From the NCBI RefSeq assembly GCF_040938485.1, contig NW_027271172.1, forward strand, positions 4,712,001-4,776,000: a stretch of DNA of 64,000 bases, in the 5' to 3' direction. Below the pieces are notes generated by a model. It was given only the letters and a program-made list of their open reading frames with translations, did not search any database and had not been told where the DNA came from. Both the position numbers and the translations under genes were made by a program. This DNA comes from Diadema antillarum (Eukaryota). Below, piece by piece: positions 8,645-25,199 of this stretch. How positions within the stretch are numbered: position 1 is the first letter of the stretch; each line of letters opens with the position of its first letter.

Positions 8645-8684
8645 CGGAGCCCGTAAGGGGACATGGCAAGAAATATTTTTCCTA

Positions 8685-8853
8685 AGTCGTTCCCTCGACT
8701 TACTAAGTCGTTCCCACGACTTACTAAGTCGTTCCCTCGACTTACGTAAGTCGTTCCCACGACTTACTAAGTTGTTCCCTCGACTTACGTAAGTCGTTTC
8801 CTCGACTTACAAGTCGTTCCCTCGACTTACGTAAGTCGTTCCCTCGACTTACT
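8685..8853 (+). repeat. Subterminal tandem array of ~19-22-bp palindromic units AAGTCG-TTCCC(T/A)-CGACTT plus a short linker
   Basis: About 8 copies read directly. Confidence 0.9.
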
Positions 8854-11017
8854 AATTCATGCATAAAGATGCTCCATAGCTCAATGTGTTGTGTCTCTCC
8901 TGTGGTTGAGGTCTGCTGTGCGATCGCTGGAGATTCAAAACGGGGTAAGTTAAAAAATTGTCGATTTTGATCCCATTATTTGCTCATTTTGTCTTGTATT
9001 GAAAAAGAGCTAGTTCCTTAGACTTACTTTTTATAGGAATTTTCGTGAAAATGAGAAAGATGTGTTTCCTAGAACTGACAAAGTTGTGGCCGTCGCGAAC
9101 ACTCTGTGGGCACACAGTTCATCTATAATAGTCCCACACATAGCTTTTTGTGTTGGCATTTTTGTTGTTGCATTGGCAAGCTCCTTTTTTTTTTTCTGCT
9201 GCCAGGGCTCTATGTCTAGTACAGTATAGGCTAGCTTTGAAAGAAAAAAGAAAATCGGAAAAAGATCGATATCAACCAGACTTTCTGGAAGTATGAAAGT
9301 GTGAAAAGGACGTTAAAATAATGTTCATTGTCAAAAACCGCTACTTTCAAGCAGGATTCAGGAGCCACGGTGGAGTGCTGGTGCATGGTGATCCGTACCG
9401 TGATTTGCTAGGCCTACTGCTAAAGGGCTACGGCTAGCTACGCCTATAAAGGATAATTACCTGGTACATAGGGCCTACCGGTACCTAGTTAATTACTACC
9501 ATATACATAGGCCTACCCCACCCCGTGGCCTCATTCCCCTCCTGTACATGATTGTATAGGCCCTACAGATCATGGTGTAGGCTAGTTATTTCGTAATTAT
9601 ATACTGTCCATGCGACACGAAAGCTTGCTTAATTTTTTGAAGGATCAATTGAAATCTTAGAATTCAGTGTTGACTTGCTGGATCAATGAAAAGCTAGGAC
9701 TTTAACAATGAACAAATGCCAAGTATACATCTGTTTGTTGTTGTTGTTGTTTTTTTTTTGGTGGGGGGGGGGAGGGAAGAGAAATTGAATCATATCCATA
9801 GCAAGTAGCTGAAAGTGATCAGAGATGCAATGATAGTACTGTGGTGTTAAAGTGTATTAGACATTGCCAGTAAAACCTTAAGTTTTGTAATACAGTGTGT
9901 AGGTATATACTGACTATAGCCACCATGTCTGGCATTTCAGACAAGAAGCGTTCGATAAGATCAGCAAACTGACTGTAGGATATCCAGGCAAAAATATTTA
10001 TCAGTGCTTTTGTTGAAAACAAGTGGTTGAAGGGGTATTCGTTGAAAGCTACAATGGCCTGGATTTCCAGTGATTTACTTGATGGAGTCATATCTATGAG
10101 TACAACAAACTGACTTCTTTATGCTCTTTTGTTTGTGGAAAGAACAAATAGTCCTTGTTAAAATGCATCAAAACAAATGGTATCCGGACACTTACCAATT
10201 TGATACCAGAGTTTGCATAGTAGGCCTACTCTACTACTTTCAATAAAAGGTGTGTGCCAACCTATAGTGTAGTTGTATGTAGGCCTACTCAAGCCCCAAG
10301 TCATGGTGACCTCTGGATTTAGGGGATGAAGAAACGTGAGAGGAGAGTGCTTGCAATAGGCAGGGCACATGAGGGCCTGATGGATATAGGATGTACAATG
10401 TATATAAAGTATTTCAAAAATAGATTTTTGTACATGTCTGCATATGAATATGAGTGGGGGCTGATGGATTGATGTACAGTCAACCGTGCCTAAGTCGAAT
10501 TTATTTGGACTAAAGAAATAGATTCGGCTTCAAAAATTTTTTTGGCTTTTTAGGGATCAAATTTAATAGAATATAAAGGGAAAAGGATGTGAAAAGATTG
10601 TAGACTTTGGTGATCATTTGACTTTAATATGCAAGGTGAATGACTGTATAGAGTGTTCAATTGTTACAGAGGGGATTATATGAAAGCAGTTCAAAGAATG
10701 TTCTTACATTATGGTAATATTGAGAAAAAAGTGTCTGCTTCTAAACATCAACTGTCCATTTTGTTCCTACATTGATTGTTTGCAAATTCTCATTCCTCTT
10801 TTGTACTGCATGATAAGACAATTTTAGCTATTTTATCAACAGGCAAAGGAAGAAAAAGAGGGGAAAAAAACATGTTTCTTCATGGCCGAGACTCATACCA
10901 GCATAAGAATTCCAGCTAGTGCACACAGACAGTAAGTGAACATTGTAAATTGTACAATTATTTCTAGTTATAGAGAGAGAATGAAAAGTTAAGGACCTCA
11001 CAGCTTGAAATGTTTAT

Positions 11018-11793
11018 GGGCAATTCCGCGGTTAGTAACGTTACATTTGAACAAATTTAGATATTTGTTTTTACTACAAAATTACCATTTATTCATTTCA
11101 AGTCAAAATTATGTCAAAAACATATTCATCCTTCCCATGTTTATGATACAGAAAAGAATGAATACAATCCAAGAAATATTAGAATTGCTATGGCAACTTA
11201 AAGGGCTGGTTAGTAACGTTACGAAAAAAGGACATGACAAAAAAATCAATGTCTTGTAACAAAAAGTGTGCAAAAATTCAAGTTACTTCAAACAAAGTGT
11301 TGCATTAATTTCAATTATTGCATCATGACAAATTTTCATGCAAATTTTTTTTAGCAGTTCCACCGATAATTTTTTAGTTAGACCCCCAAAAGCATGGTTA
11401 GTAACGTTAGGGTTAGTAACGTTACATTTGTCCGGAGTAATTCCGCAGGTCATTTCACCCTTTTGTAATTGACAAAATGTCACATGACTTCTGCAGTATT
11501 TAAATGTATTCATCTTTTACCCTTTAGCAAAGCTCTGAGGAGAAAATTTCAAAGGAACCCCATGTAATTTGCATTTAAGTGAATTTCAGCATCCCCAGTC
11601 CCACATGTACATTTTAGATGATGGTTTTAGATCTCGCAAAATCAATGAATACGAAAAATAAAATCTACTGAATTTGAAAGACCTTAATGATTGATGAACA
11701 TCCATGGCATTAGTTGATACCTAAATCAAGGAGTAAGATAAAGAGGCACATTTCTTTTATCCATGTCATGTCCACCTAACTGCGGAATTGCCC
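11018..11793. mobile_element. Non-autonomous DNA transposon (MITE, possibly Kolobok-like), 776 bp
   Basis: TIRs gggcaattccgcggttag / ctaactgcggaattgccc (17/18). TTAT on both flanks. Internal ggttagtaacgtta repeats at about 11030, 11208, 11397 and 11411. Confidence 0.75.
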
Positions 11794-22539: not shown

Positions 22540-24940
22540 CAGAAAAAGCATGCACACGAGGTTGTAGATAGGGGCATATCCCCTCCCACACGAAGGGGAT
22601 TTTGCGTTTTCAGACCTGAAATTCAGCGATCTGGTGCAAATTTTTGGTGCAATACTTTTTCATCGAAGTGTTAAAATCACGGAATTTAGCTCTTATTCCG
22701 AATGTGCACCATCTGTGTGTCAGTGTATAAAGTCTAGTGAGGTAGAGCTTAGGGGAAGGGGAATTCCGCCTCCCGCTCGCGGAGCTTTTGCGTTTTTAGA
22801 ATTGAAATAAAGCGATCTGGGTATAGCCACAGTCTACTTCTATGGCGGAAGGGGGGGGGGGGAGGAGGGGCGGGTGAGCAGGGAGAAGGCGTGGACGAGT
22901 GTTATCTCCACCTTTCCCTTCCGATGGAGCTTTTGCCTTTTTAAGATTGAAATTGAGATATCTCGTATACGCATATTTGATGGAATCAACATTTGGGAAA
23001 TCAAAAAAAAAAAAAAAAACCTGATGGGGGAGGGGACCGAGGGAGGAAAGGGTCGATTAAAAGGGGAAATTCCCCTTATACATGAGGGAACCTTGAGTTT
23101 TTGGAAGGTATGTGATAAGTCTTGTGCACTCAGAATTATTCATAATTTTTTTGTAAATCTAAAAAGTGTACTAAGCTAGGGAAAGAGGCACAGAGGGGGA
23201 GGGTTTGGGAGGGGGATACCCCCTCCCAAGCACGAGAGATTTTGCATATTTTGAACTGAAATTCAACGATCTGGTGCACACTTTGAGTGAAATATTCAAA
23301 TAAATATCTTATTTGATGAAAGGTTGCAAAGGAGACCCGCTTCATGTGCATGCATACAGTATACACGCATTTTTTTTTTCCGCCTCCCAAATCCCCGGTC
23401 CAAATCTTAGGGGGGGCGATCGCCCCCATCGCCCCCCCCCCTGGCTACGCCAGTGAATCACAATCTTTTGTCGGCTCCGGGCTTTTTGAACAATGTTTCA
23501 CAGTATATACCTCTTTAATTATGGTTAAAAGAAATCTCAGAAAAATATCTTATTTCTTGATCACCCTTTCATGTCGATTTGAAAAGCAGTTTACTAAACC
23601 CTTGAATTACCATTTTAGTAAGTCTTCTTTTTTTTTTTACCAGCGGATGGGGGTGGGGGGGGGGGGGCACATGCCCTTGCATACGAGGGTGCTTTTGCAT
23701 TTTTAGAATTCAGATGAAAATATCTCGTAAACACATTTATGATGTAATTTGGGGAAATTTCAATCCCAGAAGTGTATACTATTGTTAGGGGGGGGGGGGA
23801 CCCTCCGTTAATTGAAAGTATCTAGATATCTCCTCCCATCCTAGGAACATTTGCATTTCTTTAAACTGAAGAAACAGACCTGGTGCACACTTTAGATGAA
23901 ACATTTTGAAATCTGTCAATCTAAAGTGTAATAAGTAGAAATGACTGAACGGGGAGGGTATGGGAGGGGTTAGGCCTAACCTCTCTTACGCGAGGGAGAT
24001 TTTGTATTTTCAGAATTGAAATTCAGCCATCTTTGGGTGAAATATTTAGACAGTTTTCTATCAAAAAAGTAAAAACATTTCCACATCTCGGGAGTTACGA
24101 GGAGGAGTAAAATGATATGTTTGTCCCCAATGCTTTTATGGGGGAACCATCCCCCTCCCCCTCCATCGACGCCTCTGCATATGTGAGGGAACTTTTGTAA
24201 GTGAAAGATCTGCTGTACGCTCTTTAATGAAATATAAGGAAATACGTCAATCTCAAAAGTGTACATAGTCTATCGAAAGGGACCCAGTAGCGGAGCTTTT
24301 GCATATTTATGATTGCAATTCAGCGATCCGGTGCATAAATCTGGCGGTAGTTGTACAATTTTCCATAAAGAAAGTTCGACATTTGTCCTCATCTCGGGAA
24401 TTGCTTGGGGGACAAATGATTTGTCTGCCCCCAACATTTCCATAGGGGCGGGGCAAATGGCCCTTTGCCCCCCCCCCCCCTAGATTCGACGCCCCTGATC
24501 ATCCCTGGGTATGCCCATAGATGTATCAGAGTCATCATCGTTTCAGGAATGATTCAGGAAATGGAGGGGGGGGGGTTCATGGCGGTATAGTTTTTGCTAT
24601 TGTTTGTTTGTTTTCGTACATAATTTGCAGATGGTCCCGAGTTGCTCGCTTCATAGCATGTTTACATGTAAGCCTATGCTATTTGGCGTTGTCATCGTCT
24701 GGACCATACCATATGTCGATATTACTTTCGCGAGCGAGCGTTTGAGAAAATGATGTATACATTATCCTACAAGATAGAATGCTGTTCAGCTCTTTTACCT
24801 GTCTGAAGGCGGGCGTACGAACGTCATGCAATATGCCGAAATTGATACAATCACATTTCTGCTTCCTCCATTTTTTTCTCAAATTTCAGGGGGGATATAT
24901 CCCCCCCATCCCCCCCCCCCCCGGATTTACGCCCATGTAT
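22540..24940. repeat. Further cluster of GC-rich MITE-like repeats (poly-G/poly-C, gaaattcagcgatctggtgca motif)
   Basis: The motif recurs at about 22620, 23260, 23870 and 24315. Confidence 0.5.
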
Positions 24941-24951
24941 GAGATTATGCG

Positions 24952-25160
24952 TAAGTCGAGGGAACGACTTATAAGTCGTGGGAACGACTTACGTAAGTCG
25001 AGGGAACGACTTATAAGTCGTGGGAACGACTTACGTAAGTCGAGGGAACACTTATAAGTCGTGGGAACGACTTACGTAAGTCGAGGGAACGACATAGTAA
25101 GTCGAGGGAACGACTTATAAGTCGTGGGAACGATTTACGTAAGTAGACGGAACGACTTAG
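24952..25160 (-). repeat. Subterminal tandem array of the same palindromic ~20-22-bp unit, in inverted orientation
   Basis: About 10 copies of aagtcg(a/t)gggaacgactt with alternating at/acgt linkers. Confidence 0.9.
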
Positions 25161-25199
25161 GAAAAATATTTCTTGCCATGTCCCCTTAGGGGCTCCGTA

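What the first reader, a model, noticed from the sequence alone, without database searches (positions are those of the whole stretch)
8645..25197. Candidate giant (16.5-kb) TA-flanked foldback/cargo transposon filling intron 2
Seen: inward-facing termini with 1 mismatch in 49 bp, each followed by ~170-210 bp of the same palindromic repeat array. TA lies on both flanks, no partner arm is near either end, and the block sits inside a split MITE. About 85% of the host intron would be this one element, which has collected a MITE, a LINE tail, a SINE, a PLE and a satellite. No transposase ORF is visible. Inference: a large non-autonomous or spliced-gene DNA transposon I cannot assign to a superfamily; the most likely undescribed system in this window.
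Basis: partly seen in the sequence, partly recalled or inferred. Interest (0 to 1): 0.8.

Follow-up and report, generated by a model that had tools for sequence, protein, structure and literature searches.

The report
Old non-autonomous transposon swollen by insertions
The 16.5-kb block is a real but ordinary non-coding cut-and-paste transposon of a roughly 8-kb family in a sea-urchin-type genome, doubled in size by later insertions, and it is not a giant cargo-carrying element.

Summary
Window 8643-25199 is bounded by inverted termini (1 mismatch in 49 nt). Each is followed by 7-10 phased copies of a 20-bp palindromic unit (TAAGTCG-TTCCC[T/A]-CGACTTA). The block splits a high-copy MITE.

- **Unit size.** The termini belong to a family with at least 12 independent loci and a shared, colinear interior of about 8 kb (C800, C776, C1302 and others, 81-95% identity).
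- **Extra DNA.** About half of the window copy is absent from the three other full-length copies read. It consists of a 776-bp MITE with its own duplication, a 959-bp Penelope-like fragment with an 11-bp duplication, a local tandem duplication, and a 6.46-kb repeat and satellite block that replaces 30 bp of family sequence. The only other place holding the PLE fragment and the 6.46-kb block is contig C96. C96 is the other haplotype of the same locus and carries a 6-kb deletion.
- **TA is not a target duplication.** At five junctions that lie in other repeats, paralogue homology stops outside the TA. TA is therefore the first two bases of the terminus. The true duplication looks like 3-8 bp and is unresolved.
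- **No transposase.** None was found inside. A second family of 3.2-5.4 kb shares only the outer 23 bp. It may be the autonomous partner but could not be read. The superfamily is unassigned.

This is a new family of a known kind, of low to moderate interest.

The parts
8108..8642 (.). Left half of the split high-copy MITE. MITE homology ends at 8638, and 8639-8642 (GTAG) is extra sequence absent from the paralogues.
8643..8682 (+). Left terminus: TA plus a unique tip (TACGGAGCCCGTAAGGGGACATGGCAAGAAATATTTTTCC).
8683..8855 (+). Left subterminal array: about 8 phased 20-bp palindromic units (TAAGTCG-TTCCC[T/A]-CGACTTA) spaced 20-22 bp apart.
8856..11017 (+). Left interior shared with the family (84-91% identical to C800, C776 and C1302).
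11018..11793 (.). Nested 776-bp MITE (TIR GGGCAATTCCGCGGTTAG), flanked by a TTA(T) duplication. Absent from the three other full-length copies read.
11794..13296 (+). Family interior carrying a local duplication; a 238-bp x 1.9 tandem repeat lies at 12371-12820.
13297..17225 (+). Central and right interior shared with the family. Its first ~1.9 kb (13297-15237) is also ~83% similar to at least 7 loci that lack these termini.
17226..18184 (-). Nested Penelope-like fragment with a 255-aa ORF (17333-18100, GIY-YIG domain). It is flanked by an 11-bp duplication ATAGCTTTCTT (17215-17225 and 18185-18195).
18185..18480 (+). End of the family right interior (95% identical to C1302).
18481..24937 (.). 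A 6.46-kb locus-specific block of repeats, bounded by G12 and C13 runs. It replaces 30 bp of family sequence and no Pfam domain was found in it.
20335..22520 (.). A 273-bp satellite x 8 inside the block. The array is absent in the other haplotype.
24938..25160 (-). Family sequence resumes (TATGAGATTATG), followed by the right subterminal array of about 10 units.
25161..25199 (-). Right terminus (…GGAAAAATATTTCTTGCCATGTCCCCTTAGGGGCTCCGTA).
25200..25363 (.). Right half of the split MITE. Homology starts at 25200, directly after TA.

Best explanation
Window 8643-25199 is one old copy of a non-autonomous cut-and-paste (TIR) DNA transposon family whose ancestral unit is about 8 kb.

**Ends.** Each end has a roughly 40-bp tip that begins with TA, the element's own first two bases. 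The tip is followed by 7-10 phased copies of a 20-bp unit with 7-bp palindromic arms.

**Likely mechanism (inferred).** A transposase supplied by another element recognises the outer ~23 bp, which a second family shares. It binds the repeated units, excises the element and reinserts it with a short target duplication, probably 6-8 bp.

**History of this copy (shown).** It landed inside a MITE, probably within an intron of a major-facilitator-type transporter gene on the minus strand. It then grew from about 8 to 16.6 kb by secondary events: a MITE insertion, a Penelope-like insertion, a local duplication and a 6.46-kb repeat and satellite block next to the right array.

**Shown versus inferred.** Shown: the anatomy, multiple copies with different flanks, a shared interior, and added DNA that is absent from the three other full-length copies, two pieces of it with their own duplications. 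Inferred: transposase binding to the units, trans-mobilisation, the identity of the partner element, and the superfamily.
For: - Termini and arrays.
- The 23-nt tip occurs 54 times in the genome against 0 for the reversed control. Tip plus first unit occurs 27 times against 0.
- Inward-facing pairs lie 8.0-9.4 kb apart on C800/C312, C776 and C1302. Their interiors are colinear with window 8643-18480.
- Of 29 terminus loci, nearly all continue into the same left or right interior.
- At least 12 distinct flank sets are seen.
- The nested MITE and the PLE fragment have their own duplications and are absent from the three other full-length copies.
- The 6.46-kb block replaces 30 bp that six other copies conserve.
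- C96 shares both flanks at 99% identity and is therefore allelic.
- 116 units from 12 copies all have a 20-bp core, with loop TTCCCT (66) or TTCCCA (41).
- No transposase domain was found.
Against: - No transposase, and so no superfamily, has been tied to these ends.
- The candidate partner elements could not be read.
- Short exons under 60 aa of a spliced or decayed gene would escape the Pfam scan.
- The target duplication is inconsistent between the four old paired copies: GAT plus 4 extra nt in the window, CGTATT in C776, 6 of 8 in C800, and 4 of 8 in C127.
- The intron context rests on one MFS-matching open frame and one unconfirmed upstream frame.
Confidence: 0.85

Rival explanations
1. 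The whole 16.5 kb is the mobile unit: a giant cargo transposon that picked up the MITE, PLE, satellite and other repeats and moves them together.
For: One pair of matching termini encloses everything, and no nearer partner arm exists.
Against: - The three other full-length copies are 8.0-9.4 kb and lack these segments.
- The nested MITE and PLE have their own duplications.
- The only other place with the PLE fragment and the 6.46-kb block is the allelic contig C96, which has the same flanks at 99% identity.
Confidence: 0.03
2. The shared ~8-kb interior hides a multi-exon or decayed transposase gene, so the family is or was autonomous.
For: The interior is conserved in order across all full copies, and sea-urchin transposase genes can contain introns (my own knowledge).
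Against: - No Pfam transposase domain in any open frame of at least 60 aa.
- No ORF longer than about 140 aa in C800 or C1302.
- About 1.9 kb of the interior is a diverged copy of another repeat found at 7 or more loci without these ends.
- Order conservation is expected from common descent alone.
Confidence: 0.07
3. It is a Tc1/mariner or pogo-type element that duplicates a TA target.
For: TA abuts CGGAG at both window ends and at every tip in hand, apart from one mutated tip on C127.
Against: - At five junctions embedded in other repeats, paralogue homology stops just outside TA. These are the window right flank, the C368 left flank, and the C1535 and C725 right flanks; the C776 right flank overlaps TA by only 1 nt.
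- The TA-type empty site is absent genome-wide.
- No DDE_3 or DDE_1 match lies in the candidate partner elements, although only 150 of 815 and 150 of 228 candidates were scored.
Confidence: 0.05

Closest known systems
Non-autonomous TIR DNA transposons with subterminal transposase-binding repeats (for example internally deleted or rearranged hAT, P or CACTA derivatives)
   Same: - Short unique TIR tip followed by many phased subterminal repeats.
- No coding capacity.
- Multiple copies with different flanks.
- Outer terminal bases shared with a second family.
   Different: The interior is unusually long (~8 kb) and is conserved as a block. No transposase or superfamily has been linked, and the target duplication is unresolved.
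Foldback-type elements with tandem repeats in the TIRs: Tetris of Drosophila virilis (PMC4079207), Galileo of the P superfamily, and sea-urchin TU elements (the last two as cited in PMC4079207)
   Same: - Tandem sub-repeats inside the inverted ends, proposed for Galileo to add transposase-binding sites.
- Non-autonomous copies only.
- Partner transposase not found, as for Tetris.
   Different: Here the inverted ends are about 0.2 kb of an 8-kb element, so the arms do not dominate. Tetris arms reach 1.7 kb with 8-10 bp duplications. MULE and P transposase domains were not found in the candidate partner elements.
Tc1/mariner and Stowaway-like TA-targeting elements
   Same: TA lies next to both ends.
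   Different: TA is part of the terminus, not a duplicated target.

Membership tests
Non-autonomous TIR (class II, cut-and-paste) transposon | Terminal inverted repeats | tested here: met
   61 nt at 95%, with 1 mismatch in 49 nt
Non-autonomous TIR (class II, cut-and-paste) transposon | Several copies at unrelated sites that share ends and interior | tested here: met
   At least 12 flank sets; colinear interiors
Non-autonomous TIR (class II, cut-and-paste) transposon | No transposase gene of its own | tested here: met
   Pfam scan of 84 open frames of at least 60 aa found only the GIY-YIG domain of the nested PLE. Short exons were not excluded.
Non-autonomous TIR (class II, cut-and-paste) transposon | Target-site duplication of fixed length | tested here: inconclusive
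   GAT overlap plus 4 extra nt in the window; CGTATT 6 of 6 in C776; 6 of 8 in C800; 4 of 8 in C127
Tc1/mariner/pogo | Duplication of a TA target | tested here: not met
   Paralogue homology ends outside TA at five junctions. The TA-type empty site is absent.
Tc1/mariner/pogo | DDE_3, DDE_1 or mariner transposase in an autonomous partner | tested here: inconclusive
   No DDE_3 or DDE_1 match inside the six candidate partner intervals, but only part of the candidates were scored. Transposase_1 was not searched.
Foldback elements (FB, TU, Tetris, Galileo type) | Long inverted arms that make up most of the element | tested here: not met
   Arms are about 210-260 bp of 8 kb, or of 16.6 kb in the window
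Foldback elements (FB, TU, Tetris, Galileo type) | Tandem sub-repeats within the inverted ends | tested here: met
   7-10 units per end; 116 units with a constant 20-bp core
hAT | 8-bp duplication, terminal YARNG, hAT transposase | tested here: inconclusive
   The tip TACGG fits A2 and G5 but not R3. The duplication is unresolved. No Dimer_Tnp_hAT match lies in the candidate partners, but only 150 of 222 candidates were scored.
P / Galileo | P-type (THAP9-like) transposase in a partner; 7-8 bp duplication | tested here: inconclusive
   All 117 PF21787 candidates were scored and none lies in the partner intervals. The partners themselves could not be read.
Mutator-like and Merlin | MULE or IS1595-type transposase in a partner | tested here: inconclusive
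   All 91 MULE and all 119 IS1595 candidates were scored and none lies in the partner intervals
Giant cargo-carrying mobile elements (Polinton/Maverick, Teratorn, Starship-like) | The large cargo travels with the ends to new sites; element-encoded mobility genes | tested here: not met
   The PLE fragment and the 6.46-kb block occur only at this locus and its allele. No integrase or transposase domain was found.

The most novel reading that the evidence does not exclude
The termini (tip TACGGAGCCCCTAAGGGGACATG plus phased 20-bp hairpin-like units) might belong to a cut-and-paste lineage that is not yet described, or to one with an unusual, variable target duplication. Its transposase would sit in the unread 3.2-5.4-kb elements that share only the outer 23 bp. 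In those intervals, searches for DDE_3, DDE_Tnp_4, DDE_1, hAT, P, MULE and IS1595 domains found nothing, and the KDZ search matched nowhere in the genome.
Probability: 0.1. Interest if true: 0.55.

Novelty: new member of a known kind. Interest (0 to 1): 0.25.

Why it matters
The result removes a false lead: there is no giant cargo transposon here. It also gives a clean worked example of how an intron in a repeat-rich echinoderm-type genome grows by stacked insertions. An 8-kb passenger became 16.6 kb and fills most of an apparent ~19-kb intron of a transporter gene.

For transposon curators it defines an unclassified family with a distinctive end architecture, a constant 20-bp palindromic unit repeated 7-10 times per end. 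It also lists the coordinates where the probable partner elements can be read. The allelic contig shows that such stacks stay unstable, with a 6-kb deletion that removes one terminus and a satellite array present in only one haplotype.

Tried and rejected
- **Fetching the candidate partner elements.** The intervals are C68 935259-938590, C82 1330798-1333956, C118 360046-363722, C835 1043753-1046963, C46 3082104-3086446 and C92 2255272-2260650. I did not try to read them by other means.\n- **Whole-genome Pfam searches, to see whether a transposase falls inside those intervals.** Searched: DDE_3, DDE_Tnp_4, DDE_1, Dimer_Tnp_hAT (twice), P-type RNase H, MULE, IS1595 and KDZ. None did. No RNA or population test was made.\n- **Empty site.** No haplotig with an empty site was found for C776, C1302 or C137. 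C137 and C14 turned out to be a segmental duplicate pair (88% identity).\n- **Short relatives.** L030 (C1185) and L034 (C127) hold no coding sequence.\n- **Rfam and tRNA scans** of 8000-26000 were empty.\n- **Spliced models.** I built none and joined no pieces.
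Full report
**1. What is in the sequence**

The two ends face inward. Window 8643-8703 and 25139-25199 are 61 nt long and 95% complementary (pair I6), with one mismatch in the first 49 nt after the flanking TA. Each tip is followed by a tandem array: 8682-8855 (period 43, 4.1 copies) and 24950-25160 (period 42, 5.0 copies).

The real unit is 20 bp: TAAGTCG, a 6-nt centre TTCCCT or TTCCCA, then CGACTTA. Units are spaced 20-22 bp apart, and the first begins 41-42 nt from the end on both sides. 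Across 12 independent copies, all 116 units collected have a 20-bp core (66 TTCCCT, 41 TTCCCA). No nearer partner arm exists.

**2. It is a family, and the family unit is about 8 kb**

The window is G000:C284:4712001-4776000, in a 1.75-Gb assembly that still contains haplotigs. Earlier notes of this scan describe the genome as sea-urchin-type; I did not test that.

- A 220-bp terminus query finds about 40 places. The 23-nt tip occurs 54 times against 0 for the reversed control.
- Inward-facing pairs lie 8.2 kb apart on C800 (and its haplotig C312), 8.0 kb apart on C776 and 9.4 kb apart on C1302. A 1.36-kb derivative lies on C127.
- The interiors of these copies are colinear with window 8643-18480 at 81-95% identity.
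- In 29 terminus loci, the DNA next to the array is nearly always the same left interior or the same right interior.
- Flanks differ between loci, giving at least 12 independent insertions once haplotig pairs and one segmental duplicate (C137/C14) are merged.

The transposon is real.

**3. Why this copy is 16.6 kb**

Alignment to the other copies shows segments found only in the window copy.

- **11018-11793** is a 776-bp MITE with its own inverted ends, flanked by a TTA(T) duplication of family sequence.
- **17226-18184** is a Penelope-like fragment. It has a 255-aa ORF with a GIY-YIG domain and is flanked by an 11-bp duplication ATAGCTTTCTT.
- **12371-12820** is a 238-bp tandem duplication.
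- **18481-24937** is a 6.46-kb block bounded by G12 and C13 runs. It contains a 273-bp x 8 satellite. It replaces 30 bp that six other copies conserve between the right interior and the right array.

The only other place with the PLE fragment and the 6.46-kb block is C96:67181-97180. Its flanks match window 1-8125 at 99% and it has the identical right junction, so it is the other haplotype of this locus. That allele lacks window 8126-14203, which includes the left terminus and also the nested-MITE region, and it lacks the satellite array. The extra DNA therefore accumulated in place and did not travel as cargo.

**4. The TA**

TA precedes CGGAG at every tip in hand, apart from one mutated tip on C127. 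Five junctions lie inside other high-copy repeats, so the paralogues act as empty sites.

- **Window.** MITE homology ends at 8638 and resumes at 25200, directly after the right TA. The overlap is GAT, and 4 extra nt (GTAG) sit on the left.
- **C368.** 37 of 39 paralogues end one base before TA.
- **C725.** 29 of 39 paralogues start at the first base after TA, and none includes it.
- **C1535.** 2 of 3 paralogues start right after TA.
- **C776.** 39 of 40 paralogues start at the A of TA.

TA is therefore the first dinucleotide of the terminus. The true duplication is unresolved:

| Copy | Flanking repeat |
|---|---|
| Window | GAT plus 4 extra nt |
| C776 | CGTATT, 6 of 6, directly abutting both tips |
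| C800 | CTATTTAC / CTATCTGC, 6 of 8 |
| C127 | 4 of 8 |

I read this as a 6-8-bp duplication blurred by age, with low confidence.

**5. Coding capacity and partner**

- No open frame of at least 60 aa in 8645-25197 matches a Pfam transposase. The only hit is the nested PLE's GIY-YIG domain.
- C800 and C1302 have no ORF above about 140 aa.
- About 1.9 kb of the shared interior (window 13297-15237) is also ~83% similar to 7 or more loci without these termini. The interior is therefore at least partly a mosaic of other repeats.

A second family shares only the outer 23 nt. It consists of six inward pairs 3.2-5.4 kb apart and two pairs of about 260 bp. These are not hit by longer terminus queries. 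They are the obvious candidates for the autonomous partner. None did, for DDE_3, DDE_Tnp_4, DDE_1, hAT, P, MULE and IS1595. The KDZ search matched nowhere. For four of these families not all candidates were scored, so this evidence is weak.

**6. Context**

An open frame at 5025-6287 on the minus strand matches the major facilitator family. A frame near 25.4-25.9 kb on the same strand looks like an upstream membrane segment, but it had no Pfam hit. The splice sites were not verified.

**7. Mechanism and comparison**

The most likely mechanism is cut-and-paste by a transposase supplied in trans. It would recognise the shared 23-nt tip and bind the phased palindromic units, whose spacing is about two helical turns. 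This is inferred from the anatomy and from what is known of subterminal binding sites in other families. Galileo is one example, as cited in PMC4079207.

The closest known kinds are non-autonomous TIR elements with subterminal repeats and, more loosely, foldback-type elements such as Tetris, Galileo and sea-urchin TU. The inverted ends here are only about 0.2 kb of 8 kb, so 'foldback' fits poorly.

**8. Verdict**

This is a real, old, non-autonomous transposon of an unclassified family, enlarged by nested insertions. It is not a giant cargo element and not a TA-duplicating one. It is a new member of a known kind, of low to moderate interest.

Noticed in passing
L036-L038 (G000:C96:67181-97180) versus window 1-25260: This is the other haplotype of the locus. 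Its flanks are 99% identical, but it lacks window 8126-14203 (a 6-kb deletion that removes the left terminus and half of the MITE). It also lacks the 273-bp satellite array. Inside the element, identity is about 97%, against 99% in the flanks.
   Followed up: partly
G000:C68 935259-938590; C82 1330798-1333956; C118 360046-363722; C835 1043753-1046963; C46 3082104-3086446; C92 2255272-2260650; C451 742143-742401; C1655 469491-469752: Inward-facing pairs of the exact 23-nt tip that share nothing further with the 8-kb family. They may be the autonomous partner or a sister family. They could not be read.
   Followed up: partly
window 13297-15237: This part of the shared interior is ~83% similar and colinear with at least 7 loci that lack the family termini (C72, C99, C1140, C605, C772, C479, C921). 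An unrelated repeat was probably built into the ancestor of the family.
   Followed up: no
L032 8930-9630 (G000:C800:1696170-1696872) and its haplotig C312: The right terminus is duplicated in tandem together with its flank. Two tips lie 441 bp apart and have the same flanking sequence.
   Followed up: no
L025 (G000:C14, near 1075241) versus L008 (C137): The first ~16 nt of the tip are tandemly duplicated in C14 but not in its segmental-duplicate partner C137.
   Followed up: no
L033 880-998 and 9028-9200 (G000:C776): The C776 copy sits inside a high-copy repeat built of nested hairpin units (…CTGCCTGATAAGCACGT…). At least 262 candidate copies exist, about 96% identical.
   Followed up: no
window 5025-6287 (-) and 422-2248 (-): A 421-aa open frame matches the major facilitator superfamily (E = 4e-11) and is probably a host exon. 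A 609-aa open frame carries a reverse-transcriptase domain (E = 1e-37).
   Followed up: no
window 18481-18500, 18555-18587 and 24889-24922: Long G and C homopolymer runs and GGGGGG…CCCCCC palindromes mark the edges and the inside of the 6.46-kb block. Parts of the block (19605-20279 and 23454-23659) recur next to the C127 element.
   Followed up: partly
Rfam at gathering score found no family match anywhere in 8000-26000. A minimal motif below threshold is not excluded.
   Followed up: partly
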